DNA from: Mytilus trossulus
Taxonomy: Eukaryota
DNA: 64,000 bases
Reading direction: 5' to 3'
Assembly: GCF_036588685.1 (NCBI RefSeq)
Contig: NC_086382.1
Coordinates: 52,576,001-52,640,000, forward strand
In this document: one piece after another, positions 4,816 to 25,800 of the stretch
How the letters are laid out: each line of letters begins with the position of its first letter
How positions within the stretch are numbered: the first letter of the stretch is position 1
The notes under the pieces: model-generated
Told to the model about the DNA's origin: nothing
What the model saw: the letters and a program-made list of their open reading frames with translations, nothing else
Database searches by the model: none
Program-made: the position numbers and the translations under genes

Positions 4816-7800
4816 ATGATTTTGTGTTGGGTTCTCGTTTTTCTACAACAAATATGGATAACTACGGGATCAAAAGGAGAGTGAGTATTTTTATTTCTTT
4901 ACCAATCATCATCTCAAAATCTGGAATGAAGATTTTAATATTACTGAAACAACTTTAAAATTAAGAAATAATTCATGGGGGCTTGAATCTATCGTTATTT
5001 TACCACGGGTTGGCCCTTTATGACAAATATTTTACCCTGAGCGATAGCGAGGGGTAAGATATCGGCATAAAGGGACAACCCGTGGTAAAATCTAGATATA
5101 TTCAAGCCCCCATGAATTATTTCGATTCTAATAGGACAAATACGGCATTTTTGTAGATCGAAGCGCTCTAGGTGGAGGCCATTATTTGCCGTTCCCATAC
5201 ATTAACCCTCTTGCTGCCGACCGTTTTTCAAGGTTGCATTTCATATGCCGGAAAATACGACAGCTCAACGTCTGTGACGTAAAATGCCAAACAACGACGT
5301 CATTCGATATATGACGTCACGACATGATGACCACTACATTTGGGACCCATTGGAGAAAAACATAACCCTGTTTAATATTTGGTATTTTATTTGAAAGAGA
5401 TACAGCATTGATGAGAAGATTGCATAAATTTATCCATGGACATATGTGTCCCTCCGGCACTGCCGGTTTGGACATATGTGTCCCTCCGGCAGCAAGAGGG
5501 TTAACGCACTTTTAGATTGGCGTACTCAAAGCGTTTGTAACATTCTAACATGACGTCCTTCAAACGCTTTGAGTACACACCCGTGGTAAAATATGAATAT
5601 ATTGCATTGGCTGTTCCGATCGTACTCCCACGTCATATGTTTTTTTCATGAATGAAGTACACGACGTCATAGAATGATGACGTTATAATTTAAGCATTTT
5701 ACGGGAAAATACACGCTTTTGATACCGAATATCATCACAACAAGGAAACGTAAACAAACGATGCTAAAATGTGGTATAAGCCCATCTTTTATATACATAG
5801 AAGACATATAAGTAAGTTATCATTAAAATTCATCCAAATCTATCTAAATAAGTTTTGTGAATAGTTTGAGCATGTCACTTATTTTGTTTGCTCCGTTCTT
5901 TTACGCCAATTTAAAAGTGCGTTAATTTATGGGAACGGCAAATAATGGCCTCCACCTAGAGCGCTTCGATCTACAAAAAATGCCGTATTTGTCCTATTAG
6001 AATCGAAATAATTCATGGGGGCTTGAATATATCTAGATTTTACCACGGGTTGTCCCTTTATGCCGATATTTTACCCCTCGCTATCGCTCAGGGTAAAATA
6101 TTTGTCATAAAGGGCCAACCCGTGGTAAAATAACGATATATTCAAGCCCCCATGAATTATTTCTTAAATAATATGAAGTGAAGGAAATGTAAAATGCATG
6201 ACTTTGTAAAACCATTAATATGAATTAACTTTTTCTGTTTGATATACCATTACTTTTAAGTTATATTGTGATTTTAGGGTATTGCAAATGAATTTTCCAA
6301 GTATAACAGTAGCTGCACAAGAAAAGGGAAATTTAACAGCTGAGGTAAATACAATACTGCTAGCTTCAGGTAAAACAGTATATATAGTTAAACTTTATAT
6401 TGCTTCATAGATTCTTTCTGAATTTTTAGCCTGACGTCCTTCTTGTATTAGTTTCTAATAAAAAAATTATGCAGTAAGGTTTATTTATATTTAATTGTGT
6501 TTACGTATAAGTCTGTAAATAAAATCTTTGATTTTGTAATTTCAGTCCGGACTAAATGGAGATATCCACATCAATCCAGGAAATGGTACAGGGACTGTCT
6601 ATTTTGAAGGAATCGATTTATTAGAGATAGTGAAGGTATGTGCAGGGTCAAGTTGATGTGTTATCAGTTTTTTTTCTCTTTTTTATGTTTTTCTGTTGTT
6701 GTTTTTTTTTATATCTATATGAAAAACTTTATCACTCAAACATTGTTACAAAGTTTTCAAATAAAGCCTTAATTCTACATGATATCAAAAGTTTCATTCA
6801 GTTTGTGAGTAAATGTACTGTTTGTGCAGAACGTATCTAGTTCGAACTAAATATTTGTCAACGACTTCAAAATTTCTTCAACAATGAAATACCATTACTA
6901 TGAATTACTCATTCCCATTTACTATTTCAGATTGTGTACAGTCTACCGCCAATTTGGATAAACCATTCTCATGTAGGTTTTGTTGGAACGTATGAAGGCG
7001 GTAAAGAGGTCGATATACCGTTGAAAGTCAAGGTTGGCATTTTACTTCATGTTTTTGTTTCTAAAGTGAAAAGTAATGAAATAGCACAGTAAATAGAGTT
7101 ATGAATATTAAGTGTCATATATTTTTCTCCTCCCCCTACCCCGAAAAAAATTACCGCCATCTTCATATTCTTAGAATATATACTGTTTTAATACTAACTG
7201 TATTAAATTGCAATGATATCTTCTTTCAGGAACCATCAGGAGGAAAAATAAGATTTAGCCTTGTCGCTGGAGATTTCCCTCCCGGAATACATCTTGAATC
7301 AGATCGAAGTAGGATATATGGTATAGCACCAGACGTTGATGCTCAGTATAGCTTTACTATACGTGCTACTGGATCTCGGGGGATGTTTGAAGATGCAGTT
7401 TTTAAAATGGAAACTATCGGTGAGGACATGTTTTTTTTCCGGTTTGACAACCAAACATAAAGCATATCACAGCTAGATATTTTTAGTTTTACCATTATTA
7501 TTTTTTGTGGGAAATACATCACAACTTAATAGATTAAGGAAAAACATCATGATGCAGATTAAGCTTGTCGTCTACAAGGTTCCTGGCATAATTTTTTTTC
7601 GTTGTGACAATAAAAACATGAATAACTGGGCTAAATATTTTTAGCTTTTACTATTATCATTTTTCAAGGATTAAGGGAGATGTTGGATATACATCAAGAA
7701 GAAAGGAAACGAAAAACAAAAACAAAAACAAAAACACAGTGAAGATTGTTAGTAGTTGTGGTGGTCTTTTGAAATATATTTTTATTTATTTTCAATGTTT

Positions 7801-11770: not shown

Positions 11771-12725
11771 GATGACGACGGATATTTTGTAACTATCCCG
11801 TCCTGTTTTCATCAAATGTGACCTGCCAAATAAGATTTATTATCGTATTTTTTACTAGATAAGCAACATGACGAAGGTCAAATAAGAAGCAGAATATAAC
11901 TACTATTCCGAAGTACCTGCTAAAACCCCGGGTGTTTTTAGGGTTTGTGTTGTTCAGTCTTTGGTTTGCATTGTGTTTTTTGTGTACTCCCTGTTTTTGT
12001 CGATTTTCGTTGTTTACAATTTCTGAGTTTTAATGCCATTTTGGTTTGGAATTATCGCCTCTTTTTTAAAGACCTAAATATTAATGAGATATCTGCTACT
12101 CGATTTTGATCAAATAACACAATACTACATTGTATGCATTTTTGAAAAAAAAACAAGGAAAAAACTCTTTTAGAATCATCATGGTATAGATAAGCGTTTA
12201 CAATTAATGATGTTCCTACGGATATTTTTTATCCCTGTGTTCGTATGGAATGGTTTTTTTTACATATTTTATCTCACGATGAAGAAGAAACATTGTCATG
12301 TCACAAATTAAGAATGAATTTGGTGCAAATAGATAAAAGTACGACCTACAACACGGAGCCATGGCTCACAACAAACAGCAAGCTATAAAGGGCCCCAAAA
12401 TGACTAGTGTAAGACAATTCAAACAGAAAATCCAATGGTCGAATCTATATAAAAAAAAAGAAAAATGAAAAAGCCTTATGAATCACATCAACAAACAACC
12501 ACAGGTTTCTGACTCAGAACCGGTGTAAACAAAAACAGCTGATTTTAACATTTTCACAAACGCCAACATTCACTCTAGTGATTGTAGTGTAGCATTGCAA
12601 CATAAAAAAGACACACAAATTGTTTTCAGTTTTAAGATAAACACTGGTTTGAAAAATTAACAAAATCAAAGACATGATAACTAAATGTTAATGATTCATT
12701 TATTAAACAAATTCAACATAAACTG

Positions 12726-15700
12726 TTAATTGACAATTTCACATCCATACACTTCCACTCGCATTCCTGGTTTGGTTTGATATGTTCTTGGTATGAACCG
12801 GATATATCTGGCCGTAACCGGCTGAAGAAATGCATGTTTTATTACACTGTTCACACTGCTACTGCCAGTAAATTCCTGTAAAAAGGAAAATGCAAGTAAA
12901 TTGTCAAATAATACAAAACAATTATTTAACTGGTAGATTCTGTATTCTTGTATTATGAATATATTTATTTAAAAAAAATGGATAGTCTTGTATACAACTT
13001 TCAAAATTTACCCCGAAAACCATAGTCAGGTGGTGATTGAAGGGGTATTGTAAAATCCTGACTATTGAAAAACAAATAAAAGAAAAAAGAAAAAAAAAGT
13101 ATTTAACTGGTGTACGCTCGGATAGTCATTTAGAAAGAACCTATTATATTACGGAGTAGTATTAATAACAACAGTATTATATTTACAAATTGTTTATTAT
13201 GTATATAATTAGAATCAATCACTTAGGGAAAGAACGAACACCTTTAAAATTAAACAAAAACCTCAGCAAAAATACAACATGAAAGTGTATTGTAGTTAAC
13301 AATTATTTTTTTTCTTCAAATCGCTAAAACTATCAGGTCGACTTCACATGCATTAACATATAAAGAAATGTATGTGTGTTATGGGTAATAACAGAAGCAC
13401 TATGTTTACCATTGCAGATGTTCCATTGACAACATTGGTAAAGGTATTTCCATCAACACTGTACTGTACCCTGAAGGTCTTGATGTAGCTTGACGATGAC
13501 TGACCTTGGGTTGCTACTCCATAAACAGATGTAGGATGACCTATGTCAACCTGTAATTTTAAAGTTTTGTTTTATTGGCAAGTTTTATGTAGAAATAACT
13601 GAGCACTAAAATGAAATGAATATGAAGAAACTTTCATTTTCGAGAATCTGCTATTTTCTACATGTACGATCATTAAAATATTTGATGAATAAGTTATACT
13701 AGCCTGTAACCAAGAGCCTGTATTGGTACCAGACCAGCCACGTGGGTTGTTTAGTCTTCCATCAGAAGCAGGGTGATCTCCTGAAGCGTAATGGGAAGAC
13801 AGCTGAGCATCTGGTATGGTCTTAACGCCGTTATCTACACCGACAGCTTTACTTCTACAATCTGTACAAAAAATATTGATGTCAATTTTTTGGTTTTTGC
13901 TGGGAAATTTGATTAACAGATAATAACTTTTAAAGAAATTTAGTATAAACCCTATTTGTAAAAAGAAAAATCACAAAAATACTGAACTTGCAGGAAAATC
14001 AATTCGGAAAGTCCATAATAACATGGCAAAATCGAATAACAAAACACATAAAAAACGAATGGATAAGAACTGTCATATTCCTGACTTGGTACAGGCATTT
14101 TCAAATGTAGAAAATGGCGGGTTAAACCTGGTTTTATAGCGCTAACCATCTACTTTTAAGTTTTAATATAATTAGATGTGCGATTAATAAAACAAGGATC
14201 CTGATCATACACTTGGAAGTTTTCAAAGTTGATATCCTTATGACCACTAATATATATAAATATTAAAATAAAACGTACCAAACTGACATGATGATCCACC
14301 ATAAGGATTTGTACAGTTACACTTATAATCATCTATAGCATCTTCACATTTTCCATTGTACTGACAGGGATTACTATTGCACTGGTTCTTCTCTGAAAAT
14401 ATAACAAGATTCGGTATTCTTACTAGCATCATACAGAATTGAGTTTAACACTTGTAGAATCCCATTTAGCGCATATTATTTTATTTGCAATTCATGAGAC
14501 TCTAAATACGTTCATAAGAGTAGTTTCCTCTAACAGCCTTTTCATAACATCATCAAACAGTTGCCAGTCGTAAAAAAAATTACATATTAATCAGTATGCG
14601 TAATCAAGTAAACCAACAACAAGTGATACACTAAAAAGGGTCTTTAAACAACATGCTCTTTGTCAATTTTTTTTTATCAAAATATAGCGGAAACAAAAAT
14701 GACGAATTGCATAATATGAACTTAAAGAAATGTTATGTTTAAAATATTCTTCTAAAATCTTATCAGTAAACAGAACTATGACACCATTTTGCAAATTCTG
14801 TATGGAAAATCGAGTTAAAAAAGCCAAATACTATTATAACGTAGGACAATCAAAAATATTCTACACGGAAGGGACAAAATTTTACATGTTCCCGCGTATG
14901 ATCAAAACAGTATACCCCTTGTGTCGATTGAAAAGATCTGATCAGCATATTTGCCATGAGCGTCAGTAACACGAATGCCAAACTCGTACGTTGCATCTAC
15001 ATCCGGTGCATTTCCAGTTAATCGACCTGTAGTCTTGTCAAGGTGTACACCTGGAGGGAAAGCTCCAGATACTTTCTCAAATCTCATTTTGCCACCTTCG
15101 GGATCCTGTAAAGATATTGAATCGATAAACATAGTAATACGGCGACCAAATAATATATGATAACTTGAATTCGAACATTGAAATTAAAATATTTAAAATT
15201 TTGAGGTAATTAAAAAAATTCAGTACTACATTTTAAAATGTAAATAAAAATTGTGAATGGAAATGGGGAATGTGTCAAAGAGACAACAACAAAGACTGTT
15301 ACCCTGTTTATCAGTTCTTTTGATCCCTTCGTAAACGAATATATTTCCAATCTTTATTATGATATTTACGTTTCTGTTCAAGTTTTATAACTGAATACAA
15401 GTAATAATTAATAATAATATATAAAAAAAATCTTTATCCAGAATCCACTTTTATAAATGTTACAATTGTTCATTCGGAGAACTAAGTGCCCAATGCTTAC
15501 AATTGCTTCTAACAATAAGTTGACTGACTGTCCTCCGGCAAACACTCCAAGACTGCCATGTGCTGAGTTAACCTTCCATGTCGGTGGTAAACTGTTAACT
15601 ATCTACAAAGAATATATATAGTAAGTTTTTTAACTATTCTTATGAGAGCGTTGTAATATTTTTCAAAATGTGTATGTCATTGTTACAAATATCATTTTAA

Positions 15701-17515
15701 CATGACTAGAAATGACGTTGTTGTCCATTCGTTGGACCAAAATGTATGTTGTTAAATTCACAGAACACTCAAAATGAGGTCTACAATCAATGTGTTGTGG
15801 CCTTACCCTCATTTGACTTTAAAACGTTTAAATAACCCACGGCTAAGCTTTTGTCTAAGCTAGGTTCACATAATAAACGAAGCAATAAGACTTCTAGGCC
15901 AAAGGAACCATACTTCCCGTTTTTAACTTTCGTCGGAGTTCAGTATTTTCGTGAATTTACTTTTTGCACAAACATCTTTTTTTATAAAAGTGTAAATAAG
16001 TTATGATTCATGATTCGCCGACATGATATAATATATGGCTTGTTATAACAAATTGTTAGGTGTTGGTTTGATCAATTCGGTCCACTTTTCTGTAATAAAA
16101 ATTAAAATGTGCTTCTTTTTTGGAAGAATTGAAAAAGAAAAAAAGAACATGTATGAGGGTCCGACCAGATAATGTGCAGCATATGCTTTTCTGTTATAGT
16201 TTCTCAAATAACTATACCTCAAATAATTTAAGCATATCTGTATGTCCAATGTAAACAGTGCCATTTCCATTTGGCTTCATAAAGATGTTGCCTTGCTGAG
16301 GTCCTGCCTTCAAAATTAGAAAAGACTATAGTGCAAATGTACGTGAATGATATGTCATAACAATAGCATATTTGTAATCGCTCTTTGGTCATTACTCTAT
16401 GTCTTTTCCAAATGAAACATTAACAGAATAGCCTAGTCGGACAGTTCGTCGTCTTAATCTTATTACATTTTTTTTGGTATTAATGTATGCTAAAAATTCC
16501 CTTAGCCATCAATGATTTCCCTTTTAATATGACAATATGAAAAAAACTATCAAATTTTACTCAGACATGTTAGGCATCTTTTAGACAATAGTAGGTAAGC
16601 AGTTACTTAAATTGTATTGAATATGTTTAATACTTTGTAACGTTATTACCTGTATTGTAAGATTGCCTCCCTTTTCTGCTGTAATGTACACATTAGGATA
16701 TTGTATGTCAAAGAAACTGAAAATAAAAAGGATAAACAGAAAGTTATACTCAATTTTTGAAGATTAAACTAATGAAATGAACGTTATAACAAAAACAAAT
16801 AAACATATACAAAAAATGAAAATGTATAATACAGTGCAAGGTATGAATGAATAAACATTAAATAAAAAAAATTACGAAAAAAGAGACACAAAGGATACCA
16901 AATGGATATTCGACCTCATAATAGGAAAACAAAGGATATGGATTATTTATCCATGATATAAAATCAGTACATGCTCAACAAAAAAAACCACAAAAGTCGA
17001 AAAATAGAATTCCAACGCAATTGCAAAAAAACAAACAAAAGTAAAAAAAAAAAACACGCACAAACTAACAACAGTACATAGTACACGAAACACAACACAG
17101 CGAACCAAAAGAATGAGCAAGATGAACCCCAGTTAAAACGTGAGGCAATCTTAAATGTTCCAAAAGGGTAACCACTGTTGAGAGAGATTTGACAATAAAA
17201 AAGTCAAATAAAAAAAAAAACGTACACACTAATCCATTTTGTGCGCTCTACAAAACCGGTCTCTATAAATTGTTTTATTCACATTCACTAAAGACAAATA
17301 TGAGAAATCTATAATCAAATTAAAACAAATTATTTAATTCAGATTTTTTAAATTTAAAATTGTCGATTTACCATCAATGAATATATAAAAGCATCTGTAT
17401 GTTATGTATGCCTTGTTAATATTTTTATAAAATATTGTTATATTATAAAAAGTTCTTACCTCGCATAAATTGTCAAGAAGCATGAAGATAATATCAAAAC
17501 GCTGGTGGTAGCCAT
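12726..17515 (-). CDS. Paralog 2: same architecture (355 aa, 9 exons; intron 7 predicted GC-AG)
   Basis: Minus-strand exons 17515-17460, 16716-16650, 16307-16218, 15602-15501, 15105-14916, 14392-14279, 13861-13704, 13550-13410, 12875-12726; 1068-nt open frame. MATTSVLILSSCFLTIYA.., YPNVYITAEKGGNLTIQAGPQQGNIFMKPNGNGTVYIG, LPPTWKVNSAHGSLGVFAGGQSV..AIDPEG..SGAFPPGVHLDKTTGRLTG..YEFGIRVTDAHGKYADQIFSI, EGF CNSNPCQYNGKC, F5/8C WLQVDIG..GVATQG..ARYIRFIP..MRVEVYGC. AATAAA on the minus strand at 12704-12699. Confidence 0.9.
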
Positions 17516-17841: not shown

Positions 17842-20800
17842 AGCTTTATCGTGGTGGTCAGTTTTTTTAATTAATGGAGAAGCTTTATCTTGGTGGTCAG
17901 CTTTTTTTTATTAATGGAAAAGCTTTATCGTGTTAGGCAGGTTTTTTTTATTAATGGAGAAGCTTTATCGTGGTGGTCAGGTTTTTTTATTAATGGAGAA
18001 GCTTTATCGTGGTGGTCACTTTTTTTTTTTTATTATTAATGGAGAAGCTTTATCGTGGTGGTCAGTTTTTTTATTAATGGAGAAGCTTTATCGTGGTGGT
18101 CAGTTTTTTTTTTATTATTAATGGAGAAGCTTTATCGTGGTGGTCACTTTTTTTTTTATTATTAATGGAAAAGCTTTATTGTGATGGTCAGTTTTTTTTA
18201 TTAATTGAGAAGCTTTATCGTGGTGGTCACTTTTTTTTATTAATGGAGAAGCTTTATCGTGATGGTCAGTTTTTTTTTATTAATGGAGAAGCTTTATCGT
18301 GGTGGTCAGTTTTTTTATTAATGGAGAAGCTTAATCGTGGTGGTCAGTTTTTTTCTTAATGGAGAAGCTTTATCGTGGTGGTCAGGTTTTTTTTTGTCTT
18401 AATGGAGAAGCTTTATCGTGGTGGTCCGTTCTTTTTTTTTAATTGAGAAGCTTTATCGTGGTGGTAATTTTTTTTTATTAATGGAGAAGCTTTATCGTGG
18501 TGGTCAGTTTTTTTTTTTATTAATGGAGAAGCTTTATCTTGGTGGTCAGCCTTTTTTATAAATGGAGAAGCTTTATCGTGGTGGTCAGTTTTTTTATTAA
18601 TGGAGAAGCTTAATCGTGGTGGTCAGTTTTTTTTTTATTAATGGAGAAGCTTTATCGTGGTGGTCAGTTTTTTTTATTAATGGAGAAGCTTTATCGTGGT
18701 GGTCACTTTTTTTTATTATTATTAATGGAGAAGCTTTATCGTGGTGGTCAGGTTTTTTTTTTAATAATGGAGAAGCTTTATCGTGGTGGTCAGTTTTTTT
18801 ATTCATGGAGAAGCTTTATCGTGGTGGTAAGGTTTTTTATTAATGTAGAAGCTTTATCGTGGTGGTCAGTTTTTTTTATTAATGGAGAAGCTTTATCGTG
18901 GTGGTCAGTTTTTTTATTAATGGAGAAGCTTTATCGTGGTGGTCAGTTTTTTTTATTAATGGAGAAGCTTTATCGTGGTGGTCAGTTTTTTTATTAATGG
19001 AGAAGCTTTATCGTGGTGGTCAGTTTTTTTATTAATGGAGAAGCTTTATCGTGGTGGTCAGGTTTTTTATTAATTGAGAAGCTTTATCGTGGTGGTCATT
19101 TTTTTTATTAATGGAGAAGCTTTATCGTGGTGGTCATTTTTTTATTAATGGAGAAGCTTTATCGTGGTGGTCAGTTTTTTTTATTAATGGAGAAGTTTAT
19201 CGTGGTGGTCAGTTTTTTTTATTAATGAAGAAGCTTTATCGTGGTGGTCAGTTTTTTTATTAATTGAGAAGCTTTATCGTGGTGGTCAGTTTTTTTATTA
19301 ATGGAGAAGCTTTATCGTGGTGGTCAGGTTTTTTATTAATGGGGAAGCTTTATCGTGGTGGTCAGTTTTTTTATTAATGGAGAAGCTTTATCGGGGTGGT
19401 CAGGTTTTTTATTAATGGAGAAGCTTTATCGTGGTGGTCAGTTTTTTTTTATTAATGTAGAAGCTTTATCGTGGTGGTCAGTTTTTTGTTATTAATGGAG
19501 AAGCTTTATCGTGGTGGTCAGTTTTTTTATTAATGGAGAAGCTTTATCGTGGTGGTAAGGTTTTTTATTAATGTAGAAGCTTTATCGTGGTGGTCAGGTT
19601 TTTTTATTAATGGAGAAGCTTTATCGTGGTGGTCAGTTTTTTTATTAATGGAGAAGCTTTATCGTGGTGGTCAGGTTTTTTTTATTAATGGAGAAGCTTT
19701 ATCGTGGTGGTCAGTTTTTTTATTAATGGAGAAGCTTTATCGTGGTGGTAAGGTTTTTTATTAATGTAGAAGCTTTATCGTGGTGGTCAGTTTTTTTTTA
19801 TTAATGGAGAAGCTTTATCGTGGTGGTCAGTTTTTTTTTATTAATAGAGAAGCTTTATCGTGGTGGTCAGTTTTTTTATTAATGGAGAAGCTTTATCGTG
19901 GTGGTCAGGTTTTTTATTAATGGGGAAGCTTTATCGTGGTGGTCAGTTTTTTTATTAATGGAGAAGCTTTATCGTGGTAGTCAGTTTTTTTTCTTATTAA
20001 TGGAGAAGCTTTACCGTGGTGGTCAGTTTTTTTTTATTAACGGAGAAGCTTTATCGTGATGGTCAGGTTTTTTATTAATGGAGAAGCTTTATTGTGGTGG
20101 TCAGGTTTTTTATTAATGGAGAAGCTTTATCTTGGTGGTCAGTTTTTTTTATTAATGGAGAAGCTTTATCGTGGTGGTCAGTTTTTTTAGTAATGGAGAA
20201 GCTTTATCGTGGTGGTCACTTTTTTATTAATGGAGAAGCTTAATCGTGGTGGTCAGTTTTTTTAGTAATGGAGAAGCTTTATCGTGGTGGTCACTTTTTT
20301 ATTAATGGAGAAGCTTTATCGTGGTGGTCAGTTTTTTATTAATGGAGAAGCTTAATCGTGGTGGTAAGTTTTTTTATTAATGGAAAAGCTTTATCGTGGT
20401 GGTCAGTTTTTTTATTAATGGAGAAGCTTTATCGTGGTGGTCAGTTTTTTTATTAATGGAGAAGCTTTATCGTGGTGGTCAGTTTTTTTATTAATGGAGA
20501 AGCTTTATCGTGGTGGTCAGTTTTTTTTATTAATGAAGAAGCTTTATCGTGGTGGTCAGTTTTTTTTTTATTAATGGAGAAGCTTTATCGTGGTGATCAG
20601 TTTTTTATTAATGGAGAAGCTTTATCGGGGTGGTCAGGTTTTTTTATTAATGGAGAAGCTTTATCGTGATGGTCAGTTTTTTTTATTAATGGAGAAGCTT
20701 TATCGTGGTGGTCAGTTTTTTTATTAATGGAGAAGCTTTATCGTGGTGGTCAGTTTTTTTTATTAATGGAGAAGCTTAACGTGGTGGTCAGGTTTTTTTT

Positions 20801-21276
20801 ATTAATGGAGAAGCTTTATCGTGGTGGTCAGATTTTTATTAATGGAGAAGCTTTATCGTGGTGGTCAGTTTTTTTATTAATGGAGAAGCTTTATCGTGGT
20901 GGTCAGGTTTTTTTATTAATGGAGAAGCTTTATTGTGGTGGTTAGTTTTTTTTCTTATTAATGGAGAAGCTTTATCGTGGTGGTCAGTTTTTTTATTGAT
21001 GGAGAAGCTTTATCGTGGTGGTCAGGTTTTTTATTAATGGAGAAGCTTTATCGTGGTGGTCAGTTTCTTATTAATGGAGAAGCTTTATCGTGGTGGTCAG
21101 TTTTTTTTATTAATGAAGAAGCTTTATCGTGGTGGTCAGGTTTTTTTATTAATGGAGAAGCTTTATTGTGGTGGTCAGTTTTTTTATTAATGGAGAAGCT
21201 TTATCGTGGTGGTCAGTTTTTTTATTAATGGAGAAGCTTTATTGTGGTGGTCATTTGTTTTTATTAATGGAGAAGC
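17842..21276 (+). repeat. Tandem satellite, ~36-42 bp unit (AGCTTTATCGTGGTGGTCAG-Tn-ATTAATGGAGA), roughly 90 copies
   Basis: Directly visible. Unit length varies through the poly-T tract, and most monomers carry a HindIII site (AAGCTT). Copy number is estimated as length/38. Confidence 0.97.
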
Positions 21277-22884: not shown

Positions 22885-25800
22885 ATGGCTGCCAAGATGG
22901 CGCTTGTTGTTCTGTTTGGATTTTCTCTTGTTTCCATTATTTCATCACAAACTAATTTTGAGTAAGTAACTAATTATATTTAACGTTGAAGCCAGTCATC
23001 TGGATTGCATTGTTTGCCCCATTTAAAAATACGGCTCATTTTACAATCAATCTTCCGCAAAGTAAAAATACCCCCGTTCGTTGACAGATTGTGTTGCTCA
23101 GCCTTAAGTTTTATATGTTGTGTTTTGTATACTGGTCTGTAAATTAGTCAGAAAAAAATCATTTCGACTAACCGTCAAGTTAACTTTATTGTAATATTTT
23201 TTGTGAAATATTATATTCTAATTTCGTTCTCTATGGTATTGCAATAATCGAGTCCTCTATTTACGTCAATGGTATAACGATTTTTGCGCTTCAATGAACA
23301 TGTGTATTACATCCGAAAGTGTCTTTGTTTCTGTTTTATGAACAGGATATATATATATATATATATATAGAAATAATAAAAGATGTGGTATGATTGCCAA
23401 TAAGACTACTATCTACTCCCCACATGAGACCATAATGTCATAAAAAAATAACAACCAAAAGGGGACTTCAACAATGAGTAACATTCAAACCATATACTCT
23501 TCTTTAAAAGGAAAAATATAAGCACAAAGATGTATATTTTTCAATTCAAACGAGAAAACTATATATTTTTCTAGATGTATTAAGTGGCAATTGCCCTTTG
23601 CCTTTATATGCAATATACGGAACAATAATTTTATACTTTTCAGTCCAATGCTAGTGACTCCACCTCATGTTTTAGTCCATGCCGCTACTTCTGGTGATTT
23701 TACTATGAAGGTACATGTTTGTGTTATATTTCATTTGTACATGCAATGTATTCTATGTCTGAAAACTGGCGAAGTTGGACTTTTTGCTTATAACTTGATA
23801 ACTTGTAATAAGGCTATGAACGTTTAAATTTAATATCGATTTTGCCAAAGAGACAACACCATCGACGACACAAAATGTTCAAAAGACATGTACAGATAAA
23901 AAGAACGTCTAAATGGACCATTATGTAGACAATCACAATGTATGTGTTAAAGTTTATATGTAGTAAGATCTCTAGGCCCCTTTCCTCTTTTATATTGATT
24001 AGTGAAATAACAAAGCTTAAGGAAAAGTTGTACATAAACTTAGTACAAATAATGCACATACAATAACGGTATAATAATACATAAGTACAAACAAAACAAT
24101 AATGGTCATGTCTAGCATATATATTATATACACTACGTCTTGTTTGATGATACGGGAATGAGAAAAATACGTTCAAGATTACAGACTATTTACTTTAAAA
24201 CTGCATCTGTATATACTCATATAGCCATTAAGTTATTTTATTAATTGTAGAGTAATAATGGAGATATAAAGATTGGATACAATGAAACCGGCAAAGTCAT
24301 CTTTGATAATGAAGACTTAAATTATATAATACAGGTATATCATTAGATTGCCATATTTGTATCGTCAATGCAGTGCATTTTATTTTTTGTTTTGAGAAAT
24401 TAAAGAAATATACGAAAGCCTTTTAGAGCCATGTTAATTTACTTTTTGATATTATTAGCACAGTTTTGCTCTACGAGGGTATTACAACATTAAATGCAAT
24501 TGAACAATGTTATAACACATACAAAATTTGTCAATTTGGAACGAATGCGCTGCTGTGTTTTATGAGAAACAGGAAGAAAAAACAAATAAACAAATCTTGA
24601 AAAAATCGATTTTCATTTCATTTCATTTTAGCTGATTCTTAGTCAACCTCCCGTATGGGAAGAACATTCTCCGTTTGGATATATTGGAGAATTTCACGCA
24701 GGGGACAAAATAGATGTAAACGTCATAGCTAAGGTATACATTATGTGAATAGTATGTATAATAACTCTTATTTTCAATCATATATTATAGGATCACTGGA
24801 GGCTGCATGTTTGAAAGGCAAATACATTTTGGGTCATTATATGCAATCAAAATCATAACTTAAACAGAGTTTGAACGCATTCTAGGGAATATACTTGTAT
24901 GGAGGGTGCAATACAAATGTTTAGCAATTGACTCCGATTTGTTAAAATCAATTGCAGTGAGACGATTAACATCAATTGAAAAAAAAAATCTTTTCCTCTG
25001 AAAATACATGACAGAATCATTGTTTTTAAACTTAATGGCATTATTATCTGTTCGACTCAAAATTTATAAAATCGTACAGGCACATGAGTGGTTATCATGG
25101 TGTCTAGACAAAACTGCATTGAAAAAAAAAAGCAAATCTTAATTTAGCAATCGTAATTTCAGGATTGTATCATATAAATGTAATTATTTGAAATGACCGT
25201 TTGAACAATTTTAGATTTTTTCAAAATGTGCTTCGATCCAAGCTTTTACACTTCAATACACTTACATAAGGAACCATTAAATCTCAAGTACAAAACTATG
25301 CAACTAAGAAGCGAATTCAAATATATTAATTTGTCTTTGTAAATTCGATATATAGATGCTAGTCTAGTTAAAATTATGTCGTCACAGGACCCGGAAGGAC
25401 AACCAATAGTGTATGGTATTGTAGCCGGAATGTTGCCACCTGGAGTAAAACTAGAACCTGATTCCGGTCGAATACATGGACTAATTCCCGATTCTGATGC
25501 CACTTACACGATAACTATTAGAGCTACAGATATACATGGTCATTTTGCTGATAGTGTATTCAAAATTGTTACCCGTGGTAAGCATATTTCACTAATGGAA
25601 ATATAGAGGAATTATTAAATTTTTCTGTGCATTTTTGTTCTGAACTACTTAATTTTTTTCAAAGACATGCTTTTCAAAATATGCTTAATTATTAAAAACG
25701 GACTTATCGAACATTGATTCCAAATAAGTACATTAAATAACAAATCAAAATCAATCATGCCTTATCATCATTTATTCTTTCTTACTTAGGAATAATATAT

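What the first reader, a model, noticed from the sequence alone, without database searches (positions are those of the whole stretch)
14916..15602. Ig-like domain reads like a marine phage/bacterial He_PIG repeat: candidate horizontally acquired, intronised domain
Seen (paralog 2, exons 4-5): PPTWKVNSAHGSLGVFAGGQSVNLLLEAIDPEGGKMRFEKVSGAFPPGVHLDKTTGRLTGNAPDVDATYEFGIRVTDAHGKYADQIFSI. Known from memory: the pattern P.W....GSLG.....V.....A.DPEG....(F/Y)...SG.LP.G..L...TG.I.G..P.....T..F.IR.TD..G..AD..FSI is characteristic of putative Ig (He_PIG) repeats in bacterial surface proteins and marine tailed-phage virion proteins, more than of animal cadherin or dystroglycan CADG domains. A phase-0 intron splits the domain at the same site in all three paralogs, so it is not contamination. 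Inference: ancient transfer from a phage or bacterium, then exon shuffling onto EGF-F5/8C through the phase-1 intron.
Basis: partly seen in the sequence, partly recalled or inferred. Interest (0 to 1): 0.8.

Follow-up and report, generated by a model that had tools for sequence, protein, structure and literature searches.

The report
Phage-like Ig domain in mollusc gene
A mollusc gene family for a secreted adhesion-type protein carries one Ig-like domain whose nearest detectable relatives are in marine phages and bacteria rather than in animal cadherins, which makes it a plausible but unproven case of an anciently captured microbial domain.

Summary
On the minus strand, exon 4 (15501-15602) and exon 5 (14916-15105) encode one Ig-like domain. 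Exon 5 alone passes Pfam He_PIG (35.9 bits, cut-off 24). RNA-derived contigs from 4 of 4 runs laid show the intron 15106-15500 spliced out, so this is an expressed host gene and not contamination. The gene has 9 exons and about 355 codons: signal-like start, short N-terminal part, He_PIG, EGF, one F5/8C domain. The genome holds 5 paralogs, not 3, all in one 36-kb cluster. No other He_PIG match was found in the 1.3-Gb genome.

Outside its own family, the nearest relatives I could reach are marine tailed-phage structural proteins and bacterial or unassigned He_PIG repeat proteins (36-48% identity). Solved animal cadherin, dystroglycan and sarcoglycan domains share only the fold (12-24%). The one named relative is from the bivalve Mya arenaria, and the one Atlas cluster with this architecture holds 58 members, all Mollusca.

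Horizontal origin is not shown:
- The tree leaves the sister group unresolved.
- Several phage-directed searches were blank.
- No eukaryote-wide search was possible.
- Phage and bacterial donors cannot be told apart.

The parts
17460..17515 (-). Inferred exon 1 of paralog 2: ATG at 17515, an 18-residue hydrophobic signal-like peptide, GT donor at 17459-17458 (phase 2).
   Evidence: Read from the sequence. It lies outside the stretch on which reads were laid, so there is no RNA evidence.
16650..16716 (-). Exon 2, first part of the N-terminal segment of unknown family (YPNVYITAEKGGNLTIQ).
   Evidence: The 3' border comes from the RNA joint 16306/7 -> 16649/50 in 4 of 4 runs. The 5' border is read from a TTTTCAG acceptor. 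The segment is conserved in paralog A. It has no Pfam family.
16218..16307 (-). Exon 3, second part of the N-terminal segment (90 nt, phase 0 to 0).
   Evidence: RNA joints 15602 -> 16218 and 16306/7 -> 16649/50 in 4 of 4 runs. No Pfam family.
15501..15602 (-). Exon 4: N-terminal third of the He_PIG domain (LPPTW...GSLG...LLLEAI), 102 nt, phase 0 to 0.
   Evidence: Translation and RNA joints on both sides in 4 of 4 runs. The homologous part of the Mya arenaria model aligns with the phage 'P.W.T..G.LG' strand. Alone it has no Pfam, PHROGs or phage-record match.
15106..15500 (-). Phase-0 intron (395 nt, GT..AG) that splits the He_PIG domain near profile position 34/35.
   Evidence: Skipped in contigs of 4 of 4 runs. 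It holds a repeat at about 15166-15302 with very high depth.
14916..15105 (-). Exon 5: C-terminal two thirds of the He_PIG domain (DPEGG...FSIDTR plus 1 nt), 190 nt, phase 0 to 1.
   Evidence: Translation. Pfam PF05345 35.9 bits against cut-off 24, profile positions 35-94 of 96. RNA joints on both sides. tblastn to Pelagibacter phage HTVC200P gives 43.5% over 60 aa, E 5e-7.
14279..14392 (-). Exon 6: EGF domain, 114 nt, symmetric phase 1 to 1.
   Evidence: Pfam EGF PF00008 29.4 bits against 21.5; RNA joints.
13703..13861 (-). Exon 7: first part of the F5/8C (discoidin) domain.
   Evidence: RNA joints and homology to the other paralogs. This exon alone has no Pfam hit.
13410..13549 (-). Exon 8: middle of the F5/8C domain.
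   Evidence: Pfam F5_F8_type_C 39.0 bits against 28.2, profile positions 36-82 of 127; RNA joints.
12726..12875 (-). Exon 9: end of the F5/8C domain and the stop codon.
   Evidence: Pfam F5_F8_type_C 22.3 bits, below the cut-off for this exon alone, profile positions 84-127. RNA joint 12874/5 -> 13409/10.
6931..7032 (+). Paralog 1, He_PIG exon 4 (102 nt, AG/GT borders).
   Evidence: tblastn 42% to exon 4 of paralog 2; border scan. Not checked with RNA.
7230..7419 (+). Paralog 1, He_PIG exon 5.
   Evidence: 50% identical to exon 5 of paralog 2. Pfam He_PIG 22.6 bits, just below the cut-off. AG acceptor and GT donor.
24632..24733 (+). Paralog 3, He_PIG exon 4 (102 nt, AG/GT borders).
   Evidence: Border scan. 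tblastn with exon 4 of paralog 2 did not find it.
25388..25577 (+). Paralog 3, He_PIG exon 5.
   Evidence: 51% identical to exon 5 of paralog 2. Pfam He_PIG 27.0 bits against 24. AG acceptor and GT donor.

Best explanation
This is a real, expressed, two-exon He_PIG domain with a cadherin-like Ig beta-sandwich fold. It sits inside a small secreted mosaic protein of about 355 residues: signal-like peptide, a 52-residue N-terminal segment, He_PIG, EGF and one F5/8C discoidin domain. The protein belongs to a five-gene tandem cluster that holds the only He_PIG matches found in this genome.

Most likely origin (inferred): a prokaryote- or phage-type He_PIG domain entered an early bivalve or mollusc genome once. 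It gained a phase-0 intron and was joined at a phase-1 boundary to a standard animal EGF-discoidin cassette. The gene then duplicated. The donor, bacterium or tailed phage, is not resolved.

Most likely function (inferred from the domains only): an extracellular lectin-like adhesion or recognition protein. The discoidin domain would bind glycans or lipids. The He_PIG module would act as a rigid spacer or a weak surface-binding module, as it is thought to do on phage fibres and bacterial adhesins.

The confidence given is for the horizontal origin. That the domain is a genuine, spliced He_PIG domain of a host gene I hold at about 0.97.
For: Shown:
- Exon structure and splicing in 4 of 4 runs laid.
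- He_PIG above Pfam's cut-off.
- EGF and F5/8C downstream.
- Five copies, all in C10:52.565-52.601 Mb. Neither the Pfam model (3 matches from 6 candidates) nor the family's own profile (5 matches from 9 candidates, E up to 1) rings anywhere else in 1.3 Gb.
- Same exon sizes and borders in 5 of 5 paralogs, and the same intron site in exon-ORFs of other species.

One origin:
- 34 of 34 mollusc-type rows form one split with support 100/94.
- There is a score gap: complete own-family copies of exon 5 score 85 bits or more against the family profile, and the best outsider scores 57.

Nearest outsiders:
- Pelagibacter phage HTVC200P gp039, 43.5% over 60 aa, E 5e-7.
- 239-264-aa marine metagenome proteins of the same build as gp039, 46-48% identity.
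- Atlas: the nearest clusters by features and by structure are all Uroviricota or Bacteria, except one 'lactadherin-like' cluster (F5/8C 100%, He_PIG 88%, EGF 76%) whose 58 members are all Mollusca.
- BFVD top hits are phage fibre-like proteins, E 1e-9, 27-35% identity. PDB cadherin, dystroglycan and sarcoglycan hits reach E 5e-6 at best, with 12-24% identity.

Age and precedent:
- A spliced homologue exists in Mya arenaria (WAR27244.1), so the family predates the split between that bivalve and the window's species.
- Precedent for phage-to-bivalve transfer: PMC5303276 (search listing and start of abstract only).
Against: - The sister group of the mollusc clade is unresolved on 65 columns, and the root is unknown.
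- 36-48% identity is ordinary between unrelated He_PIG repeats, so the closeness is at family level and points to no donor.
- The Mya homologue has no phage-record hit at E 1e-3 or better; its best is E 0.5.
- Exon 4 alone has no phage-record hit.
- PHROGs gave nothing for the exons and only E 0.0012 for the Mya protein.
- The pattern scans of IMG/VR and of GTDB genomes confirmed no relative.
- The library-wide search showed only its 150 top rows, all multi-repeat giants ranked by summed score. The two word searches were length-limited to 51-163 aa and 83-264 aa. Non-mollusc animal relatives could therefore have been missed.
- He_PIG is annotated in some other eukaryotes: a ciliate, where the authors claim HGT (PMC4614350), and apicomplexan CRMPs (PMC9815656); passages seen.
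- The fold is shared with animal cadherin-like domains, so a very old vertical origin is not excluded.
- The function is inferred from domain names only.
Confidence: 0.5

Rival explanations
1. Vertical descent. He_PIG/CADG-type cadherin-like Ig domains are ancient in eukaryotes. This mollusc family kept a conservative copy that still looks like the prokaryotic consensus, while other animals lost it or let it diverge beyond recognition.
For: - The predicted fold matches animal cadherin EC domains, the dystroglycan juxtamembrane domain (8uf4_A) and a chain of the dystrophin-glycoprotein complex (8yt8_O) at probability 1.00.
- He_PIG is annotated in other eukaryotes.
- The tree does not nest the mollusc clade inside any prokaryotic or phage clade.
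- The searches could not see most eukaryotic proteins.
Against: - There is no significant sequence match to any solved animal domain, and no Pfam Cadherin hit.
- Identity to animal domains is 12-24%, against 36-48% to phage-like and bacterial ones.
- The domain occurs only in this one gene cluster of the genome.
- The only eukaryotic cluster near it in the Atlas is mollusc-only.
Confidence: 0.33
2. Specifically a tailed-phage donor: the domain comes from a virion fibre protein of a marine podophage-like virus, not from a bacterium. This is a sub-case of the best explanation.
For: - The best named hit is Pelagibacter phage HTVC200P gp039.
- The best outsiders against the family profile are phage-like He_PIG plus glycine-rich proteins (P0265 57.0 bits, P0264 55.3).
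- In the Atlas, 8 of the 10 rows shown by structure and the 3 best rows by features are Uroviricota.
- BFVD gives better E-values than the PDB search.
Against: - Unnamed giant He_PIG repeat proteins score the same against the family profile (P0041 52.9, P0121 52.8, P0023 52.6 bits, against gp039 50.3).
- The length window favours short phage proteins over long bacterial adhesins.
- PHROGs, exon 4 alone, the Mya homologue against phage records, and the IMG/VR scan were all blank or weak.
- Only the He_PIG part matches. Neither the TIG nor the glycine-rich part of gp039, nor the F5/8C part of the Melnitz phage protein, matches the window.
Confidence: 0.2
3. Contamination, assembly artefact, or chance resemblance of an unrelated Ig-like domain.
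For: None found. The only hint is that the nearest outsiders are microbial.
Against: - The domain is split by a spliceosomal GT..AG intron that is removed in RNA contigs of 4 of 4 runs.
- It lies on a 78-Mb contig between animal-type EGF and discoidin exons.
- Five diverged paralogs, and exon-ORFs from other species, share the intron site.
- Pfam E 1e-8 on exon 5 alone.
Confidence: 0.01

Closest known systems
He_PIG domains of marine tailed-phage structural or fibre-like proteins (Pelagibacter phage HTVC200P gp039, AXH71607.1; 239-264-aa metagenomic relatives such as P0310 and P0330)
   Same: They belong to the same Pfam family, and the whole domain aligns colinearly, from the 'P.W.T..G.LG' strand to 'TY.FTIRATD..G..AD..FSI'. 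Identity is 43.5-48% over exon 5 and 36% over the full domain of the Mya homologue. They are the best structural neighbours in BFVD and, after the protein's own mollusc cluster, in the Atlas.
   Different: In the phage proteins the domain sits between a TIG-like part and a glycine-rich part, and neither part matches the window. The mollusc loop before 'TY' is 2-3 residues shorter. The mollusc copy is split by an intron and is followed by EGF and discoidin.
Giant multi-repeat He_PIG proteins of uncertain, probably bacterial origin (for example P0017 with LamG domains, P0121 with a subtilase domain)
   Same: Same Pfam family. Their best single repeats score 50-53 bits against the mollusc profile, the same as the phage domain. 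The family has 15,215 representative proteins at E 0.001 or better, and the Pfam model rings in 5 of 14 control bacterial and archaeal genomes.
   Different: They carry 9-48 tandem repeats per protein. The mollusc protein has one copy. They have no EGF or discoidin domain. Their organisms are not named by the sources.
Vertebrate lactadherin (MFGE8) and EDIL3, from which the automatic name 'lactadherin-like' comes
   Same: All are secreted EGF plus F5/8C discoidin proteins.
   Different: From recall, not tested here: vertebrate lactadherin has two tandem F5/8C domains and no He_PIG. This protein has one F5/8C domain spread over three exons, with a He_PIG domain in front.
Animal cadherin EC repeats and the dystroglycan/sarcoglycan cadherin-like (CADG) domains
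   Same: They share the cadherin-like Ig fold. Foldseek probability is 1.00, with TM-score by query 0.43-0.48, for BT-R1 EC12, protocadherin-15, E- and P-cadherin, 8uf4_A and 8yt8_O.
   Different: Identity is only 12-24%. There is no significant sequence match in the PDB and no Pfam Cadherin hit. SMART's CADG model could not be run.
Phage lysozyme genes co-opted by bivalve genomes (PMC5303276)
   Same: It is a published claim of phage-to-bivalve gene transfer followed by domestication. I saw the listing and the start of the abstract only.
   Different: That case concerns a whole enzyme gene. Here it would be a single non-catalytic domain built into a mosaic protein, and the transfer itself is not demonstrated.

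Membership tests
Pfam He_PIG (PF05345, putative Ig domain) | Score at or above the curated gathering threshold of 24 bits | tested here: met
   Exon 5 of paralog 2 scores 35.9 bits and of paralog 3 27.0. Paralog 1 scores 22.6, which is below the threshold. The spliced Mya arenaria homologue scores 39.4. The six-frame search of the genome gave 46.5, 36.4 and 26.9 bits.
Pfam He_PIG (PF05345, putative Ig domain) | Ig-like beta-sandwich of about 90-96 residues | tested here: met
   The AlphaFold2 model of the Mya homologue has mean pLDDT above 90 in the 10-residue blocks from about residue 31 to 100, and nine strands. It was modelled on the homologue, not on the window's own joined exons.
Pfam He_PIG (PF05345, putative Ig domain) | Usual context: tandem repeats in prokaryotic or viral surface proteins (typical of the family, not required for membership) | tested here: not met
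   There is a single copy per protein, in an animal mosaic with EGF and F5/8C.
Cadherin repeat (Pfam PF00028) | Match to the Cadherin profile | tested here: not met
   No Cadherin hit for exon 5 at E up to 10, or for the Mya homologue at E up to 0.1. The PDB profile search gave cadherins only at E 0.03-0.6, which is not significant.
Cadherin repeat (Pfam PF00028) | Cadherin-like fold | tested here: met
   Foldseek against the PDB: cadherin and protocadherin EC domains at E 5e-6 to 1e-4, TM-score by query 0.43-0.48, 12-24% identity.
Cadherin repeat (Pfam PF00028) | Inter-repeat calcium-binding motifs (recalled from the literature) | not tested
   The motifs are recalled, not drawn from any call. 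With a single domain there is no inter-repeat linker.
Dystroglycan-type cadherin-like domain (SMART CADG) | Match to the SMART CADG model | not testable with these tools
   None of the four profile libraries on hand holds SMART models.
Dystroglycan-type cadherin-like domain (SMART CADG) | Detectable similarity to solved dystroglycan or sarcoglycan domains | tested here: inconclusive
   By sequence there is none at E up to 10. By fold, 8uf4_A gives E 3.3e-5 at 16% identity and 8yt8_O gives E 6.7e-5 at 15% identity.
Lactadherin / EDIL3 type (EGF plus discoidin secreted proteins) | EGF domain followed by F5/8C | tested here: met
   EGF 29.4 bits. F5/8C 39.0 and 22.3 bits on two exons that cover profile positions 36-127. 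The order is confirmed by the RNA joints.
Lactadherin / EDIL3 type (EGF plus discoidin secreted proteins) | Two tandem F5/8C domains (recalled for the vertebrate proteins) | tested here: not met
   The F5/8C exons 7-9 add up to one domain, and the gene ends at the stop codon at 12726-12728.
Horizontally acquired gene or domain in an animal | Integrated in host DNA: spliceosomal introns, host flanks, expression | tested here: met
Horizontally acquired gene or domain in an animal | Nested with support inside a donor clade | tested here: inconclusive
   The mollusc clade is one split (100/94), but its neighbours are unresolved. The tree has 65 columns and 118 rows and is unrooted.
Horizontally acquired gene or domain in an animal | Absent from other animals and outgroups | not testable with these tools
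   Only indirect evidence exists: the Atlas cluster is mollusc-only, and no non-mollusc animal hit appeared in the length-limited searches.

The most novel reading that the evidence does not exclude
A virion adhesion module (He_PIG Ig-like domain) of a marine tailed phage was captured by an early bivalve or mollusc genome. It was intronised and welded by exon shuffling onto an animal EGF-discoidin cassette, then expanded into a gene cluster. The host would now use a phage-derived surface-binding domain in a secreted protein that recognises microbes or mucus glycans. This would be domain-level phage-to-animal transfer with domestication.
Probability: 0.2. Interest if true: 0.75.

Novelty: new member of a known kind. 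Interest (0 to 1): 0.5.

Why it matters
Well-supported transfers of single, non-enzymatic protein domains from phages or bacteria into animal mosaic proteins are rare. A confirmed case would show that exon shuffling can draw on microbial domain pools. It would also add to the one published claim of phage-to-bivalve transfer that I found (lysozyme, PMC5303276; abstract start only).

In practice the finding names a compact, testable gene family: five genes, about 355 residues each, expressed. It is a candidate for mollusc surface or mucosal recognition.

If a eukaryote-wide search shows the domain in many animal phyla, the finding reduces to an ordinary lineage-specific domain combination that databases already label 'lactadherin-like'.

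Tried and rejected
- Library-wide profile search (A1). It found 15,215 representatives at E 0.001 or better, but the 150 rows shown are ranked by summed score and are all 877-7,396-aa repeat proteins with 8-54 matched stretches. Their best single repeats score 24-32 bits against exon 5. This was useless for finding the nearest kin, and the family's own cluster was not among the rows shown.
- IMG/VR and GTDB pattern scans with A2. The patterns were built from the mollusc-specific 'PDVDATY' stretch. 24 and 12 stretches matched a pattern, and none was confirmed by tblastn.
- PDB sequence searches with exon 5 and with A2: nothing significant.
- PHROGs and NCBIfam: nothing for the exons.
- Exon 4 alone against phage records: no match. 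P0253 against phage records: none at E 1e-3 or better, best E 0.5.
- Co-transfer of He_PIG with F5/8C from a phage such as Melnitz, whose protein has both domains. I rejected this because only the He_PIG part of that protein matches the window.
- The listing of cluster members gave no organism names for the exon-ORFs. The one 572-aa 'member' of P0257's cluster (P0370) is an unrelated AraC-type regulator, so I ignored it.
- Naming the window's species. Run and organism names were coded, so I say only 'a mollusc'. The basis is that small shares of the stretch are held by runs labelled mollusc and gill metagenome, and that the named relative is a bivalve.
- Literature: 'He_PIG' (27 papers), 'PF05345' (10), 'dystroglycan-type cadherin-like' with 'horizontal gene transfer' (2), 'lactadherin-like' with 'bivalve' (1), and a four-term search on bivalve HGT (71). 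By title and abstract start, none of the listed papers describes this domain in molluscs. Supplementary files were not opened and could hold domain tables that mention it.
- I did not test the N-terminal exons 2-3 against phage fibres. That is another finding's subject.


Full report
1. What is there.

The feature lies on the minus strand. Window 15501-15602 translates to IVNSLPPTWKVNSAHGSLGVFAGGQSVNLLLEAI. Window 14917-15105 translates to DPEGGKMRFEKVSGAFPPGVHLDKTTGRLTGNAPDVDATYEFGIRVTDAHGKYADQIFSIDTR. A GTAAGC donor and a TTTACAG acceptor flank the 395-nt stretch between them. Wherever a whole domain was needed I used a database protein (P0253, see section 4). The joined step for the window's own protein was left out.

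Exon 5 alone matches Pfam He_PIG (PF05345) at 35.9 bits, E 1e-8, against a cut-off of 24, over profile positions 35-94 of 96. The only other listing is Big_9 at E 0.06. Exon 4 alone (34 aa) matches nothing.

2. It is an expressed, spliced host gene.

I laid Logan contigs of four runs from four studies on window 12700-16800. Two runs are recorded as RNA, one is guessed to be RNA and one is of unknown kind. In 4 of 4 runs the contigs cover the exons and skip the introns, with minus-strand GT..AG ends.

| Joint | Bases skipped |
|---|---|
| 12874/5 -> 13409/10 | 534 |
| 13549 -> 13703 | 153 |
| 13861 -> 14279 | 417 |
| 14392 -> 14916 | 523 |
| 15104/5 -> 15500/1 | 395 |
| 15602 -> 16218 | 615 |
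| 16306/7 -> 16649/50 | 342 |

Some contigs from related organisms place two of these joints one or two bases away (13862 -> 14281 and 14394 -> 14918), which I read as alignment ambiguity. Intron bins have zero depth except over three repeats. All four runs are contigs, so they show presence and splicing, not expression level.

The resulting exon model is:

| Exon | Coordinates | Length (nt) | Phase | Content |
|---|---|---|---|---|
| 2 | 16650-16716 | 67 | 2 to 0 | N-terminal segment |
| 3 | 16218-16307 | 90 | 0 to 0 | N-terminal segment |
| 4 | 15501-15602 | 102 | 0 to 0 | He_PIG, first third |
| 5 | 14916-15105 | 190 | 0 to 1 | He_PIG, last two thirds |
| 6 | 14279-14392 | 114 | 1 to 1 | EGF |
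| 7 | 13703-13861 | 159 | 1 to 1 | F5/8C |
| 8 | 13410-13549 | 140 | 1 to 0 | F5/8C |
| 9 | 12729-12875, then stop | 147 | 0 to end | F5/8C |

An upstream ATG at 17515 opens an 18-residue hydrophobic peptide followed by a GT donor. This is exon 1 (17460-17515), inferred from the sequence only. The exons sum to 1,065 nt, or 355 codons.

Pfam finds EGF in exon 6 (29.4 bits). It finds F5/8C in exons 8 and 9 (39.0 and 22.3 bits, profile positions 36-127). Exons 2 and 3 have no family.

The EGF exon is a classic symmetric 1-1 module. The pair of He_PIG exons is 0-1, which is not symmetric. That fits a fusion of an N-terminal block to an EGF-discoidin cassette better than an insertion of the domain into an existing intron. 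This last point is inference.

3. Copies.

tblastn in the window finds exon 5 three times. The whole genome (1.30 Gb, 541 contigs) holds five copies, all at C10:52,565,768-52,601,576. They are 38-63% identical to paralog 2. The two extra genes lie just upstream of the window, and each has the same exon series.

All 5 of 5 paralogs allow a 102-nt exon 4 and a 190-nt exon 5 with AG/GT borders at the same codons. Only paralog 2 was checked with RNA.

Searching the genome with Pfam's He_PIG model rings only in this cluster: 3 matches from 6 candidates. The family's own profile finds only the five copies, even at E up to 1: 5 matches from 9 candidates. The tool scores exon by exon and only the best candidates, so this is a lower bound. 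Still, no second He_PIG gene was seen.

4. Relatives inside animals.

Word-based searches with exon 5 and with alignments A2 and A3 gave 10, 64 and 488 hits. The 10 hits, and the top-scoring rows, are short exon-ORFs from Logan, ENA and JGI assemblies. They score 81-149 bits when the exon-5 stretch is essentially complete. They are 32-100% identical to paralog 2. Most of those that span the exon's ends keep the same borders, '..Q|DPE' at the start and 'R|G' at the end. Three of them read through a short open intron at the same site (P0224, P0251, P0367).

One hit is named: WAR27244.1, 'hypothetical protein MAR_012948, partial [Mya arenaria]' (P0253, 158 aa). It is a spliced model with the whole He_PIG domain followed directly by F5/8C. 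It is 52% identical to exon 5 of paralog 2 and scores 39.4 bits on He_PIG.

The Atlas holds P0253. Its nearest cluster by structure is 'lactadherin-like', 351 aa, with F5/8C in 100%, He_PIG in 88% and EGF in 76% of members. It has 58 members, and the phylum is known and is Mollusca for all 58.

So the architecture is already recorded and auto-named in public databases, and as far as I could see it is confined to molluscs. The word searches were limited to 51-163 aa and 83-264 aa. No non-mollusc animal protein appeared in them, but longer ones could not have.

5. Relatives outside animals.

- tblastn of exon 5 against 50,697 phage records hit 28 records, all below 60% identity. The best is Pelagibacter phage HTVC200P gp039 ('hypothetical protein'): 43.5% over 60 aa, E 5e-7. 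Next come other pelagiphages and uncultured Mediterranean phages, some annotated as tail fibre. Four Methylophilales phage Melnitz records also hit, in a protein annotated 'F5/8 type C domain protein' (37%, E 0.1).
- Only the He_PIG part of gp039 and of the Melnitz protein matches the window, so nothing supports co-transfer of neighbouring domains.
- In one search the best non-mollusc rows are 239-264-aa metagenomic proteins built like the N-terminal half of gp039. They are 46-48% identical over 83-89% of exon 5 and score 53-63 bits.
- Against a local profile of the family, complete own-family copies of exon 5 score 85-128 bits. The best outsiders score 57.0 (P0265) and 55.3 (P0264), both phage-like. 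The giant repeat proteins P0041, P0121 and P0023 score 52.9, 52.8 and 52.6, and gp039 scores 50.3. Phage-like and other domains are therefore equally near.
- The library-wide search gave 15,215 representatives at E 0.001 or better, but showed only repeat giants.
- Full-domain identity of P0253 to gp039 and to P0310 is 36%.

Results against a close phage link are listed in section 8.

6. Tree.

I cut exon-5-equivalent stretches from stored proteins. After dropping rows more than 88% alike, 230 remained. I used 118 of them: all 34 mollusc-type rows, the 55 best outsiders and every fifth of the rest. The method was IQ-TREE LG+C20, with 65 columns kept.

The 34 mollusc-type rows form one split (100/94), found in 100% of 200 bootstrap trees. 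The split is real. The label, however, was set by score against a profile built from those same sequences.

The position of the split among outsiders is unresolved, and the root is unknown. The tree therefore supports one origin of the family and says nothing about a donor.

7. Structure.

AlphaFold2 on P0253 with alignment A4 (27 rows) gave mean pLDDT 74. The He_PIG part is above 90 (residues about 30-100) and has nine strands.

| Library | Best hits | E-value | TM-score by query | Identity |
|---|---|---|---|---|
| PDB (Foldseek) | BT-R1 EC12; protocadherin-15; Rib Long; dystroglycan juxtamembrane domain 8uf4_A; SraP modules; E- and P-cadherin; 8yt8_O | 5e-6 to 1e-4 | 0.38-0.51 | 12-24% |
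| BFVD (viral models) | Phage proteins, including a 'Tail fiber protein' of an uncultured Mediterranean phage and Pelagibacter phage proteins | 1e-9 to 1e-7 | 0.52-0.55 | 26-35% |

The fold is the cadherin-like Ig fold shared by all these groups. In both sequence and model, the mollusc domain sits nearer the phage-type He_PIG than any solved animal domain.

8. Reading.

Shown:
- a genuine He_PIG domain in an expressed, intron-bearing mollusc gene;
- a five-gene cluster that is the only home of the domain in this genome;
- a single clade of mollusc sequences that includes Mya arenaria;
- nearest detectable outsiders that are microbial or viral.

Inferred:
- a single ancient horizontal acquisition (my estimate about 0.5), followed by intron gain, fusion to EGF-discoidin at a phase-1 boundary, and duplication;
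- the donor, which may be a bacterium or a phage.

The main rival (about 0.33) is vertical descent of an ancient cadherin-like domain that was lost or diverged elsewhere. Contamination is excluded.

Results against a close phage link:
- exon 4 alone has no phage hit;
- P0253 has none at E 1e-3 or better, and its best is E 0.5;
- PHROGs gave nothing for either exon, and E 0.0012 for P0253; NCBIfam gave nothing;
- the pattern scans of IMG/VR and GTDB confirmed none.

9. How it probably works (inference from the domains).

The product is probably a secreted protein. Its discoidin domain would bind carbohydrate or lipid ligands. The EGF and He_PIG modules would form a stalk, and He_PIG may add weak binding to glycan-rich surfaces. 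That role is recalled from the phage-mucus literature and was not checked here.

10. Known or new.

The protein cluster and its Pfam content are in public databases under an automatic name. In the paper library I found no description of He_PIG in molluscs or of this origin (listings only). He_PIG in a ciliate was called HGT by its authors (PMC4614350, passage seen). It is drawn in apicomplexan CRMPs (PMC9815656, figure legend seen). Phage lysozyme co-option in bivalves is a precedent (PMC5303276; listing and abstract start). The CADG literature is recalled, not seen. Supplementary files were not opened and may hold domain tables that bear on this.

I class the finding as a new member of a known kind. 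Interest is moderate (0.5), because the exciting part, the transfer, is plausible but not demonstrated.

Noticed in passing
window 17842-21276: A 38-bp minisatellite with 88 copies and 90% matches (consensus AGCTTTATCGTGGTGGTCAGTTTTTTTATTAATGGAGA). It lies between paralogs 2 and 3 and causes a strong GC skew (0.52) and many spurious repetitive ORFs.
   Followed up: partly
window 13933-14206, 15166-15302 and 15851-15987 (introns of paralog 2): These short stretches have summed contig depth in the hundreds to thousands in all four runs, with many loose ends. They look like fragments of abundant, transcribed interspersed repeats.
   Followed up: no
L002:1927-3960 (Methylophilales phage Melnitz-2, QZI94702.1): A phage protein annotated 'F5/8 type C domain protein' also carries a He_PIG domain. 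It therefore combines the same two domain families as the mollusc protein, but only its He_PIG part matches the window.
   Followed up: partly
window 16218-16307 and 16650-16716 (also L006:7254-7358 and L007:1089-1160): The N-terminal exons 2-3 are conserved between paralogs (47-63% identity) but have no Pfam family. I did not test that.
   Followed up: no
proteins P0015, P0017, P0023, P0087: These are four 2,600-3,500-aa He_PIG and LamG repeat proteins with similar N-termini. Their repeat near residue 890-960 is among the outsiders most like the mollusc domain. The source could be a giant virus, a jumbo phage or a small-genome bacterium.
   Followed up: partly
protein P0370: This 572-aa protein is listed as a member of the 90% cluster of a 56-aa mollusc-type exon ORF, but it is an unrelated AraC-type regulator (Pfam HTH_18). 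It is probably a clustering artefact of the collection.
   Followed up: yes
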